64,000 nucleotides of DNA from Setoptus koraiensis (lineage: Eukaryota > Animalia > Arthropoda). Numbering within the stretch: the first letter of the stretch is position 1; every line of letters begins with the position of its first letter. This document shows positions 42,751 through 57,696 of the stretch, piece by piece. The notes beneath the pieces are model-generated. The model was not told the origin of the DNA and made no database searches. It saw nothing but the letters and a program-made list of their open reading frames with translations. The translations under genes and the position numbers were made by a program. The stretch covers positions 12,648,001 through 12,712,000 of the forward strand of contig CM106586.1 in assembly GCA_048013815.1 (NCBI GenBank). The letters run 5' to 3'.

Positions 42751-44257
42751 ATTTAGCCTTAATGAATAAAATTTCTATAAGTTATTCAGCCTACAATAAT
42801 ATGATTATGAGTTTGATCCTTATAATCATTTGAGATAATGAAATTGTATGAGAGCAACGTGGACGATCTATCTCTCTGCATGGAACATTTCATAATGAAT
42901 CTCAATGTACATTTCGTCATTATGAGTTTGCCGCATCACAAGTAGTTGTATATTGATAATAGATAGATGGAGGCCTCTGTGGGTCCGAATGTAGAGTGAT
43001 AAGGATCAAACTCAGCTAGGTGACGATCTCGACAACATAAATGAAAGAGATCGAATTCTGACGGAATGAGGTCACGAGAAACAAATGTATTGAATCTCCC
43101 AAATGCTCTGGAATGAAAATGGACTCAATGCTGCCTTCAATGGACTGTTGTGTGTGTGATTGTCTTTACCTATCAATAGAAAATTGATGATCGTCAGGTA
43201 GAACGACATGACGTGCGAGTTCAATGAGATGGAATTGAATGGTCATATTGCACTCGGACCATTTACAGGCTATCACGATGAATGTGTACAAAAAATTCTG
43301 AATTTTGAATACTGTGAGATCGACATCGATACTTCATTCCGCTGATTAACGCATCAGCGTCTGTTTTGTAGTTTGGATCAGCGAAATTGACAACCAATTC
43401 GAGAACCAATACATCCCCGTGCTTTTTTTCTCGTCTTTGTAGTTTTTCAACTATCAATAATGTTCGATGAACAGTTGATCAGTGTCGTCTAGGCATGATT
43501 CAGGAAGTTAGCACATGCGAGAACATCGCAGTTGATTGTCGTAGTTGTCATTTATCTTACAGCTACGAACACGGGAATCAGTACACCTTGAAAGTTGATA
43601 CAATTGTGTGCAGTATTAATTGCCATGTACCTGTTGATTGTTTGTTGTTTGTTGTCGACAGGTTGATTGTTTCATCCGAGTTGGCGGCATTCGCTAAGCT
43701 TCTCTCTCCAGTTTTCAGTCGTAATGTCAGGATAGATGTCTAATGAATAGCCATTGCAACTGATCGACAAAGTTTTCTACCAACAAACTAGAAAACAATA
43801 ACAACAACAAGACAACGATATCTTCATCTATTACATGTGTCAGTTGTATCTATAGAAAAGCATTTATCAAAACTAACTGTATACATTCCTTCTGATTGCA
43901 GCAATGACGAATGAGCTGAACACAACCAGCTCGGATCTTGGTTGTGAAATTTTATGTAGCATCACTAGACGTTCACCTGAGTAGTGACACAGTCGAGTGT
44001 TACCGAAGGAATTTCCACCAAAGTTTTGATCAACAATTTGCTTACTTTTACATCTGATTAGTCGCCGTTTTGACACGATGAAAGTTAGACAGATTTGAGG
44101 CAATTCAAGAAATGAACGACCAGAGTAATCAAGTGATTACCAAAGTGACCAGGTCAACACAATGAGTGCAACGTAGATATAGACGAATATTGCTTACTTC
44201 ATCAATGACTTACAAATCAATAAATTCATTGCGAATCACAAATTCATCACACTCAAC

Positions 44258-44896
44258 ATGCACTTACTAACAAGTATCACACTAAATTGTCTCCTAGTTA
44301 TACTGGCCAGTCAAGCTTACCCAATGGCCATGTCATATCATCAGCGTCATGCTCTTCGCAAACGTCACCACAATAATCAACAACAATTAGATACTTCTAA
44401 TAGTAGACCACTGCAAATGTCTGCATCATCGCAAACAGCGTCAACAAGCAAAACAGATGAGACCTCTCCGATCAGCACCAATCATAATGACGGTAGCCAG
44501 GTTGTTGTTGGAAAATTCAAGGCACCCTCGCCACCTAAAACACGAAAGCCACCACGGAAATTTACTCACGGTACACAAATTACGTCGGCCTCGATGAGAG
44601 TAAACGATCGATCCGATGATAAGTTCACATTGACAGAAAAGACAGTCCACGGCAAAGTTAGTGGACCACCGCCAAATCAACGCTACGTAAGCGCAAAGAT
44701 ACAAGTCAGCGACGAAGGTCTCAATTATCCACCGTCGAAATTGTCTGCCGATATTTATGGTAATGTGGCTGAAATAATTACAGCACCTCCCGAGGCAATT
44801 GATGGCGATTATCTGCTAAATCAATCTTCCTACTTCAACGCAGACGAAAACGATCGACAGCAAGCACTTAGAGAAAATAGACGGCTAAAGACTTAG
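44258..44896 (+). CDS. Secreted orphan protein, family copy B (212 aa)
   Basis: Signal peptide MHLLTSITLNCLLVILASQA; paralog of 25543-26175 and nearly identical to 56115-56753. Confidence 0.85.
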   Translation: MHLLTSITLNCLLVILASQAYPMAMSYHQRHALRKRHHNNQQQLDTSNSRPLQMSASSQTASTSKTDETSPISTNHNDGSQVVVGKFKAPSPPKTRKPPRKFTHGTQITSASMRVNDRSDDKFTLTEKTVHGKVSGPPPNQRYVSAKIQVSDEGLNYPPSKLSADIYGNVAEIITAPPEAIDGDYLLNQSSYFNADENDRQQALRENRRLKT

Positions 44897-44996
44897 GTCG
44901 TGGGCCAGTCGTGGCTACGATTGTATATTATAGTATCGTGTATTTGAAGAGATTGAGATGATGTCGGAAATAACAGCAGCAAGATTGAGTGTATGT

Positions 44997-47261: not shown

Positions 47262-47552
47262 TTATCCAGAAGCGGCCGTGTCAGTAGCAGTTTGTGTTTC
47301 GGTTCCGGAGGTTGTTTGAGTCGGGTTTGTGGCTGTTTGTGTATCAGTTCCAGAGGTTGTAGTAGTAGTGGTGGTTGAGCTGGAAAACAGAGCTCTTATT
47401 GTTGTGTCCTGTGTTATGTTTGGCCATCTATTTACGTAGGCACGAATACGTTGTTTGGCCCCATTTTCATTAAGACAACAATAAACCAGTTGAAGAGTTA
47501 TAGCCAACATTAAGAATGTTGCTAAGCATTTGATGGCGACTTTTGATTGCAT
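47262..47552 (-). CDS. Small secreted Thr/Ser-rich protein, copy 1 (96 aa)
   Basis: Signal peptide, conserved 34-aa core CLNENGAKQRIRAYVNRWPNITQDTTIRALFSSS and a mucin-like tail; inverted paralog at 48423-48674. Confidence 0.85.
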   Translation of the reverse strand: MQSKVAIKCLATFLMLAITLQLVYCCLNENGAKQRIRAYVNRWPNITQDTTIRALFSSSTTTTTTTSGTDTQTATNPTQTTSGTETQTATDTAASG

Positions 47553-48422
47553 CTTACTTTTGTTAGAATATTTTTTCTTGGATTGAATTGGATAGACTTT
47601 ATAATTGTTTTGAATTGCAGTGTCAACTTGTTTGCTTGAGCTCTAATCACTGGTAATGCTATCTTGATCGTATTTCTACTTGCTGTCAAAACAAGCTCAA
47701 GTGACCCCATTTATATCTGGTATGGATGACCCAGCATGGAAATATTTTTCTAGCGGATAAAGCATAAACTCGTGAATGGGCGCACAGTTTGTCAATAATT
47801 CATTTATTCATTCCAACGAAATATAACTATTATGTGTATAACAGGCATACGTAAAACACTGTGCAATCAATCAAACAAATCAGCGATCTTGCATAACTTG
47901 CAGGTCTTGCCGTAACCCGAAACAACAATCTAGCACGTAACGATCATCGTTACGAAACTAATGATTGCCAAACAACGAGGCTCATCTACCTGATGAAATG
48001 GTGAATAAATAAATTAATTATTTGCAGATGATGTATATCTCATTATTTAAGTGACAACCTATACTCAAACAGATCGCAATCAAATGCATAAATAATTTAT
48101 GGATCAATAATGCGATGACTCAGTACTTATACAGCAGTATTAGAGCTTCCTAACCTAGATGATGTAATTCAGGTTTAATATCGATGAAATACTTTCTTAA
48201 TCCAATTGAATTCATTCCGACAACTACTTCGTAAGCTGGGTGAGTTCCCGCCAGATAGAACACGAGCTATATATACTGAGCCAAGTCGTCTACGGTTTGT
48301 AGTTGAACAGTAAGCAGAAATACCATCGATCGCAAAAAAAGTTGACAGTGCAATTTAAAACAAATACAATTGATCAAGTCTATCCCAGTCAATCCAAGAA
48401 AACATATTCTAACAAAAGTAAG

Positions 48423-48674
48423 ATGCAATCGAAAGTGGCCATCAAATGCTTAGCAACATTCTTAATGTTGGCTGTAACTCTTCAATTGGTTTCTGGCTGT
48501 CTCAATGAAACTGGGGCCAAGCAACGTATCCAAGCCTATGTAAATAGATGGCCAAACATAACACAGGACACAACAATAAGAGCCCTGTTTTCCAGCTCAA
48601 CAACAACCTCCGGGACTGGGACTCAAACAACCTCCGGAACTGGTACACAAACAGCCACGGGGACAGCGACTTAA
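48423..48674 (+). CDS. Small secreted Thr/Ser-rich protein, copy 2 (83 aa)
   Basis: ATG at 48423, with the same signal peptide and core as 47262-47552 and a shorter TTSGTGTQ repeat tail. Upstream homology extends ~130 nt; TATA-like motifs lie ~155-160 nt before both ATGs. Confidence 0.85.
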   Translation: MQSKVAIKCLATFLMLAVTLQLVSGCLNETGAKQRIQAYVNRWPNITQDTTIRALFSSSTTTSGTGTQTTSGTGTQTATGTAT

Positions 48675-49797: not shown

Positions 49798-51979
49798 ATG
49801 AATAAATCCACGACACAATTGATACTGGCGATTTTACTAGTTTGTCTCATACTATCACCATTTTTATTTAAGACAAACAAGTCCGACGAGCTAGAATCAG
49901 TTTTATCCCAGAACGACAATATCTGCACAACTCCAGTTTGTTTCGACGCCGGTGAGTGGATAGAGCCTCATCCTCATCTATGACAGTCATGTTTAGCGCT
50001 AAATGACAATCTGTTTATTTGTTTGCACTCACACTTTTTGTGTTTTCAGCCGCCCAGTTGATTAAGAATATAGACAGGACTGTGAATCCATGCGAAGACT
50101 TCTATGAGGTGAGTAATGTTTCACACATAAGTTCACCTTGATACACTGCGGAAAGAAAAGAATCACGAGGTTTGTATTTCAGCTTCTCGAATCTTTGATA
50201 CTTACCTTCTGTAATCGAGGTCATCACAACAATCTACAGAGAACATTCGCTCAAACAACATTTTTGAGTCGTTTTTCCGACACAGTCAAACAAGAATCGA
50301 AGAATTTCAACTGAATACTGTAGAGCATTCTGCTGATTGTCAACACAATTGCGGTGCAAAGGGATACTTTTTTCGAAAAGAGGCACCTGTTGTGTCAAAT
50401 GAGCTTGAAGGCACGAGTGAATAACGGATCAATGTCCACAGCTCAACTTACAAATGATAACTAAAAAATTCTGAAAATCACTCAGACTGCTTGTGATTTT
50501 CTCCCTGAATAATAACTTCTTTTCTTCCGATCTCATATACGGGGTAGTTCGCCTGTGGGAATTGGATGAAACAAAACATTCCTGAGGATGAGGGGACTGA
50601 GTTCTCACCATTTTTACTATTCGCCAATAATATAACGTACGAATTACGTGATTTGCTGGAAAAAGAGACCGACGAATCGCAAAAGGGAACAACTGAGGAC
50701 AAAATGCGTCTTTTCTACAAAAGTTGCATGAGAGAAGGTTAGTATAATTTCACTAGAAGACTCCACATGCCTCACCCGTCGTTGGATGCTAAATCATGAA
50801 AGGCACGCAAAAAGATCTGATATCAAGAGGACACTGTCACTTATACGAGCGATTTTTCTGAATAACTTTTCTTCAATAATGTCTGCTATCAACGATGTTC
50901 TGTTAGGCTCAAATCCACAACCGACGTATTATTTTGAGCTGTATACTAGCATAGAGCGTAGATTGCAAAAATATGAGGCATGTTTAGATTTAGTGCTGCA
51001 TCACTTCAGCCACCCTCTGGCGTTGATGTATTTAAAAAATCATTTCAATTTTGAAAACAAAGAACCTGCTCTTAGAATAGTTATCAATGTGATGCAAGCT
51101 TTCGTCGATACCATCAAGCAAGTTTCGTGGATGGACGAAGAAACAAAGAAGGGGGCTGAGGCCAAGGCGTATGGTATGTCCATTTACATCGGCTTCACAG
51201 ACATATCATTGAACAACAGTTTATCCGAAGAAAAATATAGAAAATTTAACGTCAGTAACGACCTTTTTATGAATGAAAACCATTTAAACAAGTTGTTCAA
51301 TCCACAAGAAAGGTATCTCATATCAAGAGATGTGTGGAGAGTGCTCAAGATTGAACCTTTTTACGTTGACAACGAAAACTCACTGAATATAGCAGCAGTG
51401 CTCCTACGAGGCATTTATTACGATAGAGCCAGACCAAATTATTTAAATTTTGGCACAATTGGCAGCATCGCTGGTCACGAGATCGGGCACGCCTTCGACG
51501 AAAACTGCAGAAAAAAAGATAAAGATGGTAAATTAAATGACTGGTGGAGCGAAGAGGCCAGTCGACAGTTTGAAGAACGCTCAAAATGTTTCGTTGACCA
51601 GTATGGCAAATATCTAGAGCCAGACAGTAAATTGTATGTAAACGGTAGTCTCACTTTAAGTGAGAACATTTCCGACAATCTTGGCTTCAAAATTGCCTTT
51701 CGGGCTTACAATAACTGGGCTAAAAAGAACGGAGAAGAGCCCTTGTTGCCCGGTCTGACAGATTTGACTCCTCGTCAGTTGTTCTGGGTGTCAACAGCCA
51801 ACGTGTTTTGCACTAAGTACACCCCAGAGTTTTTGAAAAAGTACATGTCAACAAACATGCACAGCCCGAAGAGATTCCGAATAAATGGAGCGTTTTCCAA
51901 CTTAAAAGAGTTCAGCGAAACCTTCAGCTGTCCTGTAAATTCACCCATGAATCCGCTCAACAAGTGTACAGTCTATTGA
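49798..51979 (+). CDS. Neprilysin-family (M13) metallopeptidase lacking the central subdomain, copy 1 (~491 aa)
   Basis: Exons 49798-49951, 50050-50108, 50548-50737 and probably 50907-51979 (alternative acceptor 50850). CTTPVC, PCEDFYEFACG, GHEIGHAFD, ENISDNLG, HSP and terminal KCTVY. Confidence 0.93.
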
Positions 51980-52133
51980 TGAGTTGCTAGATATCAGCCG
52001 AATTAGATATACTAGAAAAAAAAGTTTTCGCCGAGGATGCAAGATTTTTCGCCGCATCAGCACGTCATAGCGATTTCAAGTGCGATGCATTCTGGATGCG
52101 ATACGATAATGCCGTTTCGTCATATTTTGTCAC

Positions 52134-52164
52134 GACACAACTTGTGACTCACAAGTTGTGAGTC
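52134..52164. repeat. Overlapping double palindrome
   Basis: CACAACTTGTGA-C-TCACAAGTTGTG (12-bp arms) overlaps GACTCACAA-G-TTGTGAGTC (9-bp arms). Confidence 0.9.
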
Positions 52165-52963
52165 TTTCAAGTAGCCCTCAAGCTGTTGATTGGTGCCGTT
52201 AATGGTTTATCTTCAAATTTAGATGGTAGATAACTGTGTGCATAAAAGCAAACAATCGTTCACTATACTACAGCTATTCAGAAGAGCGGTTTTGAAGGAT
52301 ATGCCCGCCAACGATTGTCGGGATGGAGCAATCAAAAGATCTGATAGCAGTTGGAGTGATATGGTTAGGGTGTCCTGTCATCACGATGCAGCATCGTAGA
52401 GGCTTAGGGCATCTGCTGACAAGAAAGGAAAAGAAAAAATTATTGGCAAATAAACTAAATCTCTGCGATCAGTAAACAACTTTTCTATACATTTCGCTTC
52501 GGGGTATTGCATAATAAACTGATGATTGATATTGTCTAGGTAAGCACTTTTTGTGACACTAAGAAATTAAGATTCAAAGAGCATTCCTCTTATCTTGTCT
52601 GACTCTCTATCCGTCTGTTAGGATCACATATAATCTTACAGTTGAGCTGCTACTCTCGTGAATGCAAGCACTTATAATCATCGCATCTGTCTCTAGCTAT
52701 AAAAATACGATTAATGCATAATCATATTGTTGATCCTTTTGTTGATTGCAACAGGATCAAATACAACAAGGTCGTCTCAACAGAACCAATGATGGACGAA
52801 TATATCACAAGATTACTGTCACTTTTAATTGCAACCAGCCATCAACAACCAGTGAAGAGCTCAAGGGGCGTCGAGTGAATTAATGTCGCAATCATATATC
52901 GCGACAACTGTCGATTTTAGTTGAAAATAATTTCAAAACAACTAACATTTTGATATTAATAAA

Positions 52964-54950
52964 ATGTACAATACTAGTGTCAAAGGATTGATTTTGACAA
53001 AAATTCTGGCATTCTGCCTCATCGGAGCAAGCGTTTGTTGTTCATCAATCATTTCGAATGTCTCATTAGAGTTGAATTATAACAAAACAAATCCGAACAA
53101 TGCATCATTGTCAACGCATTCACCGTATCAATCAAATAGGAATCAGACCTCAACGAACGATTATAAAGAACCCAGTTCACCAATCAATGGAACTGCCAAT
53201 ATTTGCAAAAATCCGAATTGCCTGAAGTCGGGTAAGTGAACGCTCAGAATTTTCAAATCTATTCGTTAGAGACAACATTTAGTTATGTTTTGCGATACAA
53301 AGTATTTATTGGCAATCTGTTTCATCCCAATCTATGAATTGACATTCAAGCTGATAGAATATTGAAAACTATGGATAGTTCTGTGCAGCCATGCGATGAT
53401 TTCTATCAGGTAAATGGTTAAAATTATAAGTGGTCTTCCGCAATCTCTACCATTGATTAGAAAACGTGAATCAATAATCTTTACTCAAAATTCTTATTCA
53501 TCGCAGTATGCCTGCGGCAATTGGATCAACTCAAGTATCGTACCTAATGACAGATTAGAGTTAAATCAGTTTACTCAACCTATTCAAGATATGTTAGAAA
53601 GATTCTTTGAAATTGTAGAAAGAGAAACCAACGAGTCGGACAAGAATACGACTGAGGGGAAGATGCGACTTTTTTACAAGAGTTGCATGAAAAATCGTGA
53701 GTATTTCGACCATATTGCAATACTTTTTTTTTGTGATTTGGGCACCTCCTTCGATTTGTTATATAAATTTATAGTCAGCAAACAATTGAGTTGATATGTT
53801 AATAACATATTGATTCCCACATTCTCGTTGTTGCTGTCTTCGCTTTTATTCAGGAACACCTCCTGCAAAGTTGGGATCTTCAAGAGTTCTGAAACCTATT
53901 CTTGGTCAGCAGTATAAACCAACAACAAGGAGAGAACAATGTTTAGAGATTGCAATGATATCTTTTAACCAGCCTTTTTCATTAGCATATTTGAAAAAAA
54001 TTGCTCACTTCAAAACAGACACTAAAACTGTTCAGGACTTGATTCCGCATGTGAAAGACGAATTCATCGCGATAATAAAACAAACTGCATGGTTGGATGA
54101 GGAGACGAGGAAGGGTGCTGAGGCAAAAGTCAACAACATCTCTCATTGGATCAACTTCGATGGAGAATTGATGAACGAGACTAGCTCAGAAGAAGCATAC
54201 AAAAACTTACGTATCGGTCCCAATTTTCAAGCTAACATGAGAGCCTTTGGGCAATTTTTCATGCACGAAAATGAAGACATTTGGGGAAAAAGAATTGAAG
54301 CAATGTTCAGAGCAATCAAGATGAATCCTTTTTACACAGAAGACGACAATACAATTCATGTTTCGACAGAATTCATTCGAGCTGTTCACTACGATAAAGC
54401 AAGACCAAATTATCTAAATTTTGGCACAGTTGGCAGTGCGATAGGTCACGAGATCGGACATGCCCTAGACGAAAGTCGCAGAGAGAGCGATAAAGATGGT
54501 AAATCAACTAATTGGTGGGGCGAAGAGGCCAGTCGACAGTTTGAGGAACGCTCGAAATGTCTTATTGACCAATATGGCAAATATCTAGATCCAGATAGTA
54601 AAATGTATGTAAACGGTAATCTCACTTTAGATGAGAACATTTCGGACAATCTTGGCTTCAAAATTGCCTTTCGGGCTTACAATAACTGGGCTAAAAAGAA
54701 CGGAGAAGAGCCCTTGTTGCCCGGTCTGACAGATTTGACTCCTCGTCAGTTGTTCTGGGTGTCAACAGCCAATATGTTCTGCACCAAATATGATCCATAT
54801 CTCTTAAAACAATATCTGCTCGAAAATCCTCACTCTCCGAGGAAATTGCGGATAAATGGTGCATTGTCCAATATTAAAGAGTTCAGCGATACATTCAATT
54901 GTCCGACCGGTTCACCAATGAATCCCATCACCAAGTGTATTGTCTGGTGA
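52964..54950 (+). CDS. Neprilysin-family (M13) metallopeptidase lacking the central subdomain, copy 2 (537 aa)
   Basis: Exons 52964-53231, 53351-53409, 53507-53696 and 53854-54950; internal exons of 59 and 190 nt match copy 1 exactly. GHEIGHALD, ENISDNLG, HSP and KCIVW. Confidence 0.93.
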
Positions 54951-55970
54951 TGGGTGTTTTATACACTGATAGGGCTCTTGGTGATATCCTGTATCGGAAA
55001 TATTTTGTCGCATGAGCAAAAAAATACTCCAGATACTTTGGTCCCCTACAGAACTAGAGATATTCACACGTTATCATAAAGGTTCGGGTCTCGACATTCG
55101 CAGAGGCTTCCTTACATGGATTTTTTAACAATCCAAGGAGAGAAACTCATCTCCGTCAATGCTATTTGATAAGATTCTTAGTTCTAGTTTATACATACTT
55201 TGCCATGGATACCAGACGAGACAAACTTCAAATATCACCCGTAAACGAAGAAAAAGATCCCAAAAAGACCGGCCTGTCATCATGAGCATGAACCTGTTGA
55301 CTCAGACATTTGACTTCGTTGATTACACTCTAATTTTTTCCATTATCGTTGCTGCTACGTAGCGCATATACAATAAACATGAAAGAAATCATAGGATCGC
55401 GACAGCCGTTTTTTCCAACCAGTCAAATATTACAACTTCTTGTGAGCTTGAAACATCTTAGCGTTTTCAAATGTATGAGAATTGAACAAGATAGAGCAAT
55501 CCAATGATGACTACTCATCCACATTCAAGAGGCTTCTGAAAAAAGAATAAGATTCAAAATTTCTGTCCTCTGCAATTAGTGTGATATAGAAAAACAGAAA
55601 GAACAATATTCATACAAACAAATGTCAAGAGGAGCCCCAACATTTGTCATCATGTTCTACGGACGATTCATTTCGCCCATTCGTTGCAGCAAAAGATGAT
55701 CAACTATGAGAAATCGGGGCAGCATTTCCGAACCACGATCTCCCTGCCTCAGTCGACTGACTGGATGAATACCGTTGCGGAAGCTTCGATATAAATTCAA
55801 AAAGAGGGCAACCCAGCGGAAAACCCGTCAGACATATGAAGCTCTCTAGTGGAGATAGGCGTAAATTTTTGAAAACATTTGAGCGATGTACAGTTTATAA
55901 ATGAGCGTAGTTTTCTCGCGACCTGCAGTTTTTGAGACTATTTTCAACAACCGCAAAGAAATATCAGAAT

Positions 55971-56064: not shown

Positions 56065-56114
56065 CAAATACAAGATACTATAATATACAATCGTAGCCAC
56101 GACTGGCCCTCGAC

Positions 56115-56753
56115 CTAAGTCTTTAGCCGTCTATTTTCTCTAAGTGCTTGCTGTCGATCGTTTTCGTCTGCGTTGAAGTAGGAAGATTGATTTAGCAGAT
56201 AATCGCCATCAATTGCCTCAGGAGGTGCTGTAATTATTTCAGCCACATTACCATAAATATCGGCAGACAATTTCGACGGTGGATAATTGAGACCTTCGTC
56301 GCTGACTTGTATCTTTGCGCTTACGTAGCGTTGATTTGGCGGTGGTCCACTAACTTTGCCGTGGACTGTCTTTTCTGTCAATGTGAACTTATCATCGGAC
56401 CGATCGTTTACTCTCATCGAGGCCGACGTAATTTGTGTACCGTGAGTAAATTTCCGTGGTGGCTTTCGTTTTTTAGGTGGCGAGGGTGCCTTGAATTTTC
56501 CAACAACAACCTGGCTACCGTCATTATGATTGGTGCTGATCGGAGAGGTCTCATCTGTTTTGCTTGTTGACGCTGTTTGCGATGATGCAGACATTTGCAG
56601 TGGTCTACTATTAGAAGTATCTAATTGTTGTTGATTATTGTGGTGACGTTTGCGAAGAGCATGACGCTGATGATATGACATGGCCATTGGGTAAGCTTGA
56701 CTGGCCAGTATAACTAGGAGACAATTTAGTGTGATACTTGTTAGTAAGTGCAT
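56115..56753 (-). CDS. Secreted orphan protein, family copy C (212 aa)
   Basis: One amino-acid difference seen versus copy B (PPKKRK vs PPKTRK); ATG at 56753. Confidence 0.85.
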   Translation of the reverse strand: MHLLTSITLNCLLVILASQAYPMAMSYHQRHALRKRHHNNQQQLDTSNSRPLQMSASSQTASTSKTDETSPISTNHNDGSQVVVGKFKAPSPPKKRKPPRKFTHGTQITSASMRVNDRSDDKFTLTEKTVHGKVSGPPPNQRYVSAKIQVSDEGLNYPPSKLSADIYGNVAEIITAPPEAIDGDYLLNQSSYFNADENDRQQALRENRRLKT

Positions 56754-57696
56754 GTTGAGTGTGATGAATTTGTGATTCGCAATGAATTTATTGATTTGTA
56801 AGTCATTGATGAAGTAAGCAATATTCATCTATATCTACGTTGCACTCATTGTGTTGACCTGGTCACTTTGGTAATCACTTGATTACTCTGGTCGTTCATT
56901 GCTTGAATTGCCTCAAATCTGTCTAACTTTCATCGTGTCAAAACGGCGACTAATCAGATGTAAAAGTAAGCAAATTGTTGATCAAAACTTTGGTGGAAAT
57001 TCCTTCGGTAACACTCGACTGTGTCACTACTCAGGTGAACGTCTAGTGATGCTACATAAAATTTCACAACCAAGATCCGAGCTGGTTGTGTTCAGCTCAT
57101 TCGTCATTGCTGCAATCAGAAGGAATGTATACAGTTAGTTTTGATAAATGCTTTTCTATAGATACAACTGACACATGTAATAGATGAAGATATCGTTGTC
57201 TTGTTGTTGTTATTGTTTTCTAGTTTGTTGGTAGAAAACTTTGTCGATCAGTTGCAATGGCTATTCATTAGACATCTATCCTGACATTACGACTGAAAAC
57301 TGGAGAGAGAAACTTAGCGAATGCCGCCAACTCGGATGAAACAATCAACCTGTCGACAACAAACAACAAACAATCAACAGGTACATGGCAATTAATACTG
57401 CACACAATTGTATCAACTTTCAAGGTGTACTGATTCCCGTGTTCGTAGCTGCAAGATAAATGACAACTACGACAATCAACTGCGATGTTCTCGCATGTGC
57501 TAACTTCCTGAATCATGCCTAGACGACACTGATCAACTGTTCATCGAACATTATTGAAAGTTGAATAACAACAATTACTAATTAGCGAGCCAGGATAAAA
57601 TCGATGATACACAGAAGAAACTAAACCTCACCAAGGTCATATTTATAACAAATTAATTTATCTTCTTTTCATTGACAGATCTATTCACAGAAATTA

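What the first reader, a model, noticed from the sequence alone, without database searches (positions are those of the whole stretch)
49798..54950. Two tandem lidless neprilysins: the whole distal subdomain is cut out between a conserved disulfide pair
Seen: in both genes the N-terminal M13 segment ends at FYKSCM, and the next landmark, the Cys equivalent to neprilysin ...TWRRC, follows only ~28-32 residues later (SCMREGSNPQ...QKYEAC; SCMKNRTPP...RREQC). The introns at this junction (~170 and 157 nt) cannot hide the missing sequence. Established: in human neprilysin these cysteines are the C143-C411 disulfide, and the ~265 residues between them form most of the smaller, non-catalytic subdomain that roofs the active-site cavity and limits substrates to small peptides. 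The other cysteines (57/62, 80, 88, 621, 695, 735, 747), HExxH (HEIGH), the third zinc ligand with its Asp (ENISD) and HSP are all retained. Only the C234-C242 pair, which lies inside the deleted part, is lost. Inference: these are intact, secreted or signal-anchored, open-cleft M13 enzymes that might cut folded proteins rather than oligopeptides. I do not know of a described M13 with this architecture.
Basis: partly seen in the sequence, partly recalled or inferred. Interest (0 to 1): 0.85.

Follow-up and report, generated by a model that had tools for sequence, protein, structure and literature searches.

The report
Two neprilysin genes missing their lid
A mite genome carries two neighbouring neprilysin-type zinc protease genes, at least one of them expressed, that keep every catalytic residue but have lost about 235 residues, which include every residue I could check against published assignments to the domain that roofs the active site, so they may be natural open versions of an enzyme otherwise restricted to small peptides.

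Summary
Two tandem four-exon genes on the + strand (g1 49798-51979, 491 aa; g2 52964-54950, 537 aa; 50% identical) encode M13 (neprilysin-family) proteins. They match a full-length M13 profile at positions 16/38-142 and 377/378-728 only. About 235 positions are absent, and nothing else in the 64-kb window encodes them.

Spliced RNA contigs from two runs reproduce all three g2 junctions exactly, including the exon 3/4 joint. DNA contigs are collinear with the window, so this is not a mis-assembly. No RNA run holds g1.

- **Retained residues:** the zinc ligands, catalytic Glu, Asp650, His711, Arg717 and ten conserved cysteines are kept in both copies.
- **Selection:** the copies diverged long ago (dS about 1.1) under purifying selection (dN/dS about 0.35).
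- **Fold:** the exon-4 product models confidently as the neprilysin catalytic domain (Z 37).
- **Origin:** the intron-3 donor sits at the same site and phase as an intron of the ordinary neprilysin of a related mite. This fits loss of the internal exons.

An open cleft and larger substrates remain inference. The full-length fold could not be run.

The architecture is not unique. Two helminth proteins have the same excision but dead active sites, and some arthropod models show partial deletions. None is described in the searchable literature.

The parts
49798..49951 (+). g1 exon 1: start codon, 7-residue N-terminus, 17-residue hydrophobic segment (signal peptide or short anchor), first Cys pair
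   Evidence: in-frame stop 39 nt upstream
50050..50108 (+). g1 exon 2 (Cys equivalent to neprilysin C80)
50548..50737 (+). g1 exon 3: Peptidase_M13_N profile 8-69, ends SCMRE plus 1 base (phase 1)
50738..50906 (+). g1 intron 3 (169 nt), the site of the excision; no M13-like reading frame inside
50907..51979 (+). g1 exon 4: M13_N profile 294-380 plus complete Peptidase_M13; HEIGH, ENISD, HSP..R; Asn542 replaced by Glu
52665..52963 (+). g2 5' leader as seen in the RNA contig, unspliced, with short upstream reading frames
52964..53231 (+). g2 exon 1: hydrophobic N-terminus, N/S/T-rich stretch with five N-glycosylation sequons, first Cys pair
53351..53409 (+). g2 exon 2
53507..53696 (+). g2 exon 3: M13_N profile 8-69, ends SCMKN plus 1 base (phase 1)
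53697..53853 (+). g2 intron 3 (157 nt), removed exactly in RNA contigs of two runs
   Evidence: joint 53696|53854 in X4 and X5
53854..54950 (+). g2 exon 4: end of M13_N plus the complete catalytic domain; modelled at pLDDT 85, Z 37 to neprilysin residues 394-749
51473..51772 (+). 300-nt tract 90% identical to 54444-54743 (catalytic core of both genes); local dS 0.24 against more than 1 elsewhere, so probable gene conversion

Best explanation
g1 and g2 are real paralogous genes of an acariform mite that encode M13 zinc metallopeptidases consisting of the thermolysin-like catalytic domain (domain 1) and the flanking N-terminal segment. The roughly 235-residue stretch that carries the residues published as belonging to domain 2 has been cut out between the two cysteines that form the C143-C411 disulfide in neprilysin. 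Shown: the architecture, transcription of g2 with this junction, retention of all catalytic, zinc-binding and disulfide residues, purifying selection, and a neprilysin-like fold of the exon-4 product. Inferred: (1) They enter the secretory pathway through the short N-terminal hydrophobic segment and are secreted or minimally anchored and glycosylated. (2) They are active zinc endopeptidases. (3) Without domain 2 the active site is no longer enclosed, so the roughly 3-kDa size limit of neprilysin should not apply, and the altered S1'/S2' residues imply a different specificity. (4) The short form arose once, before the g1/g2 duplication, through loss of the four internal exons and the head of the last exon of an ordinary neprilysin gene.
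For: Gene models and paralogy. Profile coordinates. RNA joints at all three g2 introns in X4, two of them also in X5, no letters between the sides, and DNA contigs of X1/X2 collinear with the window. Catalytic motifs and cysteines. dN 0.40 / dS 1.13 overall, and dN 0.06-0.16 in the catalytic part. AF2 model of g2 exon 4: pLDDT 85.2, pTM 0.85; Foldseek to neprilysin E 8e-23, TMq 0.81; VIA-align Z 37 with model 15-364 aligned to neprilysin 394-749. Literature: the catalytic machinery comes from domain 1 only (PMC4908401); domain 1 is thermolysin-like and the enclosed chamber gives the preference for peptides (PMC4121237); N144, N284 and N324 lie in subdomain 2, and the size limit is about 3000 Da (PMC11700742); V399 lies in domain 2 (PMC4121237). 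Origin: the ordinary neprilysin in locus L003 has its donor after SCMNT plus 1 base, the same site and phase as intron 3 of g1 and g2, and encodes profile 143-342 in four further exons. Neighbouring genes also start with signal-peptide-like segments.
Against: No activity data exist. The full-length protein could not be folded, because a spliced protein has no reference in these tools. So it is untested whether the N-terminal segment and the retained linker helices pack stably without domain 2, or whether the cleft is really exposed. g1 is absent from the only RNA runs found and has Glu in place of the substrate-binding Asn542. In both genes the PAGILQ stretch and Trp693 that line S1' are replaced. 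The only other proteins found with the same excision, from a helminth, have lost their zinc ligands. Exact domain boundaries of neprilysin were not found in the readable literature, so 'whole domain 2' rests on four marker residues and on the structural alignment starting at residue 394. DNA run X2 shows lower depth over the 5' part of g2 and an odd junction at 54174, so g2 may not be fixed in every sample.
Confidence: 0.6

Rival explanations
1. The proteins are made but are not proteases. They would be binding or decoy proteins (pseudo-enzymes) built on the M13 scaffold, or genes on their way to being lost.
For: The helminth proteins with the same excision carry HExxR, Arg for the third zinc ligand and Tyr for His711. 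g1 is unseen in RNA and has Asn542 replaced by Glu. The S1' lining is remodelled in both genes. Bland et al. report many invertebrate M13 non-peptidases (PMC2259306). X2 depth hints that g2 is not present in the reference form in all chromosomes.
Against: Both copies keep every zinc ligand, the catalytic Glu, Asp590, Asp650, His711 and Arg717 after a divergence of dS above 1. The catalytic part has the lowest dN (0.06-0.16) and a conversion tract that keeps it uniform. Known M13 non-peptidases typically lose these residues.
Confidence: 0.17
2. They are active enzymes but the cleft is not open. It would be closed by a homodimer, by the retained linker helices and the glycosylated N-terminal stretch, or by a separate partner protein that stands in for domain 2, so substrates remain small peptides.
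For: About 90 residues before and about 60 residues after the excision (the helices that link the two domains in neprilysin) are retained. ECE-1 and other M13 enzymes form dimers (established knowledge, not tested here). The first 60 residues of the exon-4 model have lower confidence, pLDDT 39-78.
Against: No reading frame in the window resembles domain 2. Nothing here shows a partner or a dimer interface.
Confidence: 0.18
3. Artefact: the missing 235 residues exist but were lost through mis-assembly, or lie in unrecognised exons.
For: None found. The only irregularity is the loose end at 54174 in one DNA run.
Against: Independent DNA contigs (X1, X2) are collinear across both junctions. RNA contigs from two runs skip exactly 157 nt at GT..AG with nothing inserted. 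Two paralogs diverged to 50% identity share the same junction. No domain-2-like frame exists in 64 kb.
Confidence: 0.03

Closest known systems
Human neprilysin (PDB 1dmt, 6suk) and ECE-1 (3dwb), the canonical M13 peptidases
   Same: Same family by sequence (phmmer E 3.5e-62 to ECE-1 and 2.7e-55 to neprilysin). Same catalytic-domain fold (Z 35-37). Same zinc-binding and catalytic residues and five of the conserved disulfide pairs.
   Different: About 235 residues between the C143 and C411 equivalents are absent, and these include the published domain-2 markers. The N-terminus has 7 residues before the hydrophobic segment instead of a 27-residue cytoplasmic tail. Arg102 and Arg110 of the S2' site, Trp693 and the PAGILQ stretch are replaced. 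Asn542 is Glu in g1.
Helminth predicted proteins UniRef A0A0K0G372 / A0A0K0G371 (P0325, P0326; 488 and 489 aa)
   Same: Same architecture: signal-like N-terminus, the CxxFYxxACGxW start, then only about 11 residues between the two cysteines, then the catalytic domain (profile 59-102 + 382-728).
   Different: Dead active site: HExxR, Arg for Glu646, Tyr for His711. Only 28-30% identical. They sit on a separate long branch of the tree, so the loss is independent. They are uncharacterised predictions, and no transcript evidence was seen here.
Shortened M13 models in arthropod proteomes: Chironomus tepperi neprilysin-2-like XP_070490330.1 (493 aa) and Centruroides sculpturatus ECE-1-like XP_023229247.1 (593 aa)
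   Same: Internal deletions within the Peptidase_M13_N region with an intact catalytic domain.
   Different: The deletions are only partial (about 90-200 profile positions), and part of domain 2 is kept. These are automatic gene models that may lack exons.
Thermolysin (MEROPS M4)
   Same: It works like what is proposed here: a zincin with HExxH plus Glu and an open cleft that accepts proteins. Neprilysin domain 1 is described as structurally related to it (PMC4121237). Weak structural matches to M4 enzymes were found (1npc Z 4.7, 6yze Z 5.4).
   Different: A different family with no sequence relationship detectable here. The mite proteins are M13 by every sequence test.

Membership tests
MEROPS M13 / Pfam Peptidase_M13 (PF01431) | Complete C-terminal catalytic domain above the curated threshold | tested here: met
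   201.6 bits (g1) and 192.5 bits (g2) against a cut-off of 24.5, profile 1/3-203/205 of 205
MEROPS M13 | HExxH, the third zinc ligand Glu in ExxxD, and His711/Arg717 equivalents | tested here: met
   HEIGH, ENISD and HSPxxxR in both genes
MEROPS M13 | Substrate-binding Asn542 in the NAFY strand | tested here: inconclusive
   g2 has MNPFY (Asn kept, Ala to Pro); g1 has IEPFY (Asn to Glu)
Pfam Peptidase_M13_N (PF05649) | Contiguous N-terminal region of 381 profile positions | tested here: not met
   Only profile 8-69 and 294/299-380 are matched; about 224 profile positions are absent. On the home-built profile, 143-376 are absent.
Neprilysin-type two-domain architecture | A second helical domain (domain 2) that with domain 1 encloses the active-site cavity | tested here: not met
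   The absent stretch corresponds to neprilysin about 146-393 and includes N144-adjacent, N284, N324 and V399, all assigned to domain 2 (PMC11700742, PMC4121237). The structural alignment begins at neprilysin 394. Sequence level only; no full-length model.
Neprilysin-type M13 | Conserved disulfide cysteines (57-62, 80-735, 88-695, 143-411, 621-747, UniProt numbering) | tested here: met
   Ten cysteines at the aligned positions in both genes. Bond formation itself is not testable.
Neprilysin-type M13 | Type II membrane anchor with a cytoplasmic tail | tested here: inconclusive
   Seven residues followed by a 17-23-residue hydrophobic segment. This could be a cleaved signal peptide or a short anchor; no predictor was available.
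Neprilysin-type M13 | Catalytic-domain fold | tested here: met
   pLDDT 85, Z 37, rmsd 3.2 A over 343 residues to 6svy
MEROPS M13 | Zinc-dependent, phosphoramidon-sensitive endopeptidase activity | not testable with these tools
   Needs recombinant protein

The most novel reading that the evidence does not exclude
These are naturally lidless but catalytically competent neprilysins. Secreted by the mite, they would act on whole proteins or long polypeptides, possibly of its host, rather than on short signalling peptides. That would amount to a natural experiment showing that domain 2 is dispensable for M13 catalysis and serves only as a size filter.
Probability: 0.25. Interest if true: 0.75.

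Novelty: new variant of a known kind. Interest (0 to 1): 0.55.

Why it matters
In neprilysin, ECE and their relatives, the second domain is held to explain why these enzymes cut only peptides of up to about 3 kDa. How larger substrates such as amyloid beta enter the cavity is still debated (PMC4121237). A natural, transcribed M13 gene under purifying selection, with an intact active site but without that domain, offers a direct test of what the domain contributes to folding, catalysis and size selection. It also offers a compact scaffold for enzyme engineering. For mite biology, it adds a lineage-specific pair of probably secreted proteases, lying in an island of duplicated secreted-protein genes, as candidates for interaction with the host.

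Tried and rejected
- **Full-length fold of g1 or g2.** Not run. A spliced protein has no single reference, and the rules forbid typing it. Only the exon-4 product was modelled.
- **Orthologues elsewhere.** Two word-index searches and one exhaustive HMMER search of 1.84 billion representatives gave nothing above 51% identity. The best hits are fragments of ordinary neprilysins. The window's own proteins are not in those collections.
- **Expression of g1.** A second run search limited to g1 found DNA holders only.
- **Exact domain boundaries of neprilysin.** Four literature searches and three papers gave only marker residues, not ranges. The original structure paper is not in the library.
- **Literature on truncated or short M13 proteins.** Searches gave nothing relevant. 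Bland et al. 2008 mention 30 invertebrate sequences with 'significant deletions or substitutions' without detail.
- **Domain 2 encoded separately nearby.** Rejected: no six-frame match in the window.
- **Species identity.** Only narrowed to an acariform mite with an intron-poor genome. The best named eIF2-alpha hits are Dinothrombium and Leptotrombidium at 72-73%. Sample accessions of closer relatives could not be resolved to names.
- **AFDB cluster search.** It listed several 430-550-residue hits, but their sequences are not retrievable here, so I could not tell whether they are lidless.
- **Modelling a helminth lidless protein as a proxy.** Considered and dropped. The alignment would be dominated by full-length M13 sequences, so it would not test foldability independently.
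Full report
**What is there.** The window is eukaryotic, about 39% G+C, and very intron-poor. A complete Src-type kinase, ALG11, PIG-M and eIF2-alpha each lie in single reading frames. The eIF2-alpha frame is closest, among named proteins, to the acariform mites Dinothrombium and Leptotrombidium (72-73%). Unnamed assemblies reach 87%. I therefore treat the source as an acariform mite with a streamlined genome; the species was not identified.

**Gene models.** Between 49798 and 54950 I built two gene models on the + strand.
- g1: exons 49798-49951, 50050-50108, 50548-50737 and 50907-51979; 491 aa.
- g2: exons 52964-53231, 53351-53409, 53507-53696 and 53854-54950; 537 aa.

All six introns are GT..AG, and positions and phases are the same in both genes. 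The proteins are 50% identical.

**The excision.** Pfam places exon 3 on Peptidase_M13_N profile positions 8-69. It places exon 4 on positions 294/299-380 followed by a complete Peptidase_M13 domain at 193-202 bits.

I built a 728-position profile from 33 full-length relatives. On it, g1 covers 16-142 and 377-728, and g2 covers 38-142 and 378-728. No reading frame anywhere in the 64 kb, on either strand, matches positions 143-374. The missing part is therefore neither hidden in an intron nor encoded as a separate gene nearby.

Exon 3 ends two residues after the Cys of FYKSCM. The next Cys follows after 28 (g1) or 32 (g2) residues. Alignments to the crystallised chains identify these as the C143 and C411 equivalents in UniProt numbering.

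One detail needs correcting. The C234-C242 pair that is 'lost' exists only in mammalian neprilysins (PMC2259306).

**Is it real?** Contigs of two DNA runs (X1, X2) are collinear with the window across both genes. Two further runs (X4, X5, a different organism label) cover only exons and give contigs that skip 119, 97 and 157 nt at exactly the three predicted g2 introns. X4 shows all three in one 2915-nt contig with no mismatches. X5 shows two. No letters lie between the two sides of any joint, so the short form is the transcript. g1 has zero depth in those runs, and a search restricted to g1 found DNA holders only. Its expression is therefore unproven.

**Is it maintained?**
- Between g1 and g2, dS is about 1.13 and dN 0.40.
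- In the catalytic part, dN is 0.06-0.16.
- A 300-nt tract (51473-51772 and 54444-54743) is 90% identical with dS 0.24, which points to gene conversion within the catalytic core.

Both copies share the junction, so the excision predates a duplication that is itself old, and both frames have stayed open since.

**Active site and fold.** Both proteins keep the following, in literature numbering:
- HEIGH: His583, Glu584, His587.
- The Asp seven residues after the first His: Asp590.
- ENISD: Glu646, Asp650.
- HSP..R: His711, Arg717.
- Ten cysteines at the positions of five neprilysin disulfides.

Several differences lie around the specificity pockets:
- Asn542 is kept in g2 (NPFY) but is Glu in g1.
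- The PAGILQ stretch and Trp693 are replaced in both.
- Arg102 and Arg110 of the S2' region are lost.

An AlphaFold2 model of the g2 exon-4 product, built with a 50-sequence alignment, has pLDDT 85.2 and pTM 0.85. It matches neprilysin with Foldseek E 8e-23 and TMq 0.81. VIA-align gives Z 37, with model residues 15-364 on neprilysin 394-749.

**What the missing stretch is.** According to the papers I could read:
- The catalytic machinery is formed by domain 1 alone (PMC4908401).
- Domain 1 is thermolysin-like, and the enclosed chamber explains the preference for peptides (PMC4121237).
- N144, N284 and N324 lie in subdomain 2, and substrates are limited to about 3000 Da (PMC11700742).
- V399 is in domain 2 at the interface (PMC4121237).

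All four markers fall in or at the edge of the absent stretch, roughly neprilysin 146-393. This supports the reading that the excised stretch is most or all of domain 2. Exact boundaries were not available, and the retained linker helices may still project over the cleft.

**Limit of the structural test.** A spliced protein cannot be given to the tools by reference and must not be typed, so the full-length fold was not predicted. I rely instead on two points. The cysteines that tie the N-terminal segment to the catalytic domain (80-735, 88-695) are retained. And the two ends of the excision are joined by a disulfide in the parent fold, so they are neighbours in space.

**Origin.** An ordinary neprilysin of a related mite (locus L003) lies next to a TALE homeobox gene. 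It encodes profile positions 46-143, 142-220, 222-298, about 268-303, 301-343 and 342-728 in successive exons. Its donor lies after SCMNT plus one base. That is the same site and phase as intron 3 of g1 (SCMRE plus G) and g2 (SCMKN plus C).

The acceptor of g1/g2 exon 4 lies 25-29 codons before the Cys. The ordinary last exon starts about 49 profile positions before it. The simplest history is a genomic deletion that removed four internal exons and the head of the last exon, with an in-frame phase-1 acceptor then used inside that exon. This is inference.

**How unusual is it?**
- No protein above 51% identity exists in the two large collections.
- Among the 150 best representatives and 59 length-restricted hits, most short entries are fragments of ordinary enzymes.
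- Partial internal deletions occur in automatic models from Chironomus, Centruroides, Tubulanus and a fish PHEX.
- Two adjacent-accession helminth proteins (A0A0K0G372 and A0A0K0G371) have the same Cys-to-Cys excision, with only about 11 residues between the cysteines. They carry HExxR, Arg for Glu646 and Tyr for His711, so they are not peptidases.
- In a tree of the catalytic region they are far from the g1/g2 clade, so the losses are independent.
- I found no paper describing a domain-2-less M13. The library does not hold subscription journals.

**Mechanism proposed.** The proteins start with a 7-residue N-terminus and a 17-23-residue hydrophobic segment. g2 follows this with an N/S/T-rich stretch carrying five sequons. 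The neighbouring genes also begin with signal-like segments. I propose secreted or minimally anchored, glycosylated zinc endopeptidases whose cleft is no longer roofed. They would accept longer or folded substrates, and their specificity would be altered by the remodelled S1'/S2' residues.

My estimates:
- The architecture and its expression are real: about 0.9.
- The proteins are catalytically active: about 0.65.
- They act on larger substrates: about 0.3-0.4.

The rival readings are a non-catalytic scaffold protein, an enzyme whose cleft is closed by a dimer or by the retained helices, and an artefact. The data here largely exclude the artefact.

**Open irregularity.** In DNA run X2 the depth falls from 15 over g1 to about 6 between 51.5 and 54.2 kb, then rises again. 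A loose end before 54174 equals the reverse complement of 55190-55216. RNA run X5 also holds a second contig over 54071-54213 with six differences, four of them non-synonymous. g2 is therefore structurally or allelically heterogeneous among samples. I could not resolve this.

**Verdict.** The structural-functional interpretation is plausible but untested. This is a new variant of a known enzyme family with a rare architecture that is not unique. Interest is moderate to high for protease specialists.

Noticed in passing
window 43437-44946 and 56065-57574: A 1510-nt inverted repeat, 99% complementary, with arms 11.1 kb apart. It brackets the NPR2-like gene and both short M13 genes. Each arm carries a copy of a 212-237-aa reading frame with a signal-like start and no Pfam match.
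   Followed up: partly
window 47262-47552 (-) and 48303-48674 (+): A head-to-head inverted pair (arms 47368-47602 / 48373-48607, 91%) of small Thr-rich, mucin-like reading frames with signal-like N-termini. With the above, this makes the region an island of duplicated secreted-protein genes.
   Followed up: no
window 51473-51772 and 54444-54743: A 90% identical DNA tract inside genes that are otherwise about 50% identical at protein level, with local dS 0.24. Probable gene conversion across the catalytic core.
   Followed up: partly
window 51500-54200 and 54174 / 55190-55216: In DNA run X2, depth drops from 15 to about 6 over the spacer and the 5' two thirds of g2. A contig end before 54174 continues as the reverse complement of 55190-55216, the junction expected of a 1-kb inversion or a fold-back copy.
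   Followed up: partly
window 54071-54213: RNA run X5 holds two contigs here. The minor one has 6 differences in 143 nt (E255E, A261A, N267S, W271L, E277G, S283R). It is either a divergent expressed allele or a further paralog.
   Followed up: partly
window 52665-52963: The g2 transcript contig starts at least 300 nt upstream of the start codon and contains upstream ATGs with frames of 54, 29 and 13 codons. It also runs about 1 kb past the stop, possibly merging with a convergent transcript.
   Followed up: no
L003 112-1839 (-) and 3316-7203 (+): In a related mite, the ordinary six-exon neprilysin lies next to a TALE (Homeobox_KN) homeobox gene on the other strand. This echoes a first-stage note that places an Iroquois gene at the ordinary neprilysin of this genome.
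   Followed up: partly
window 50109-50547: g1 intron 2 is 439 nt, against 97 nt for the same intron in g2. It contains no M13-like frame.
   Followed up: partly
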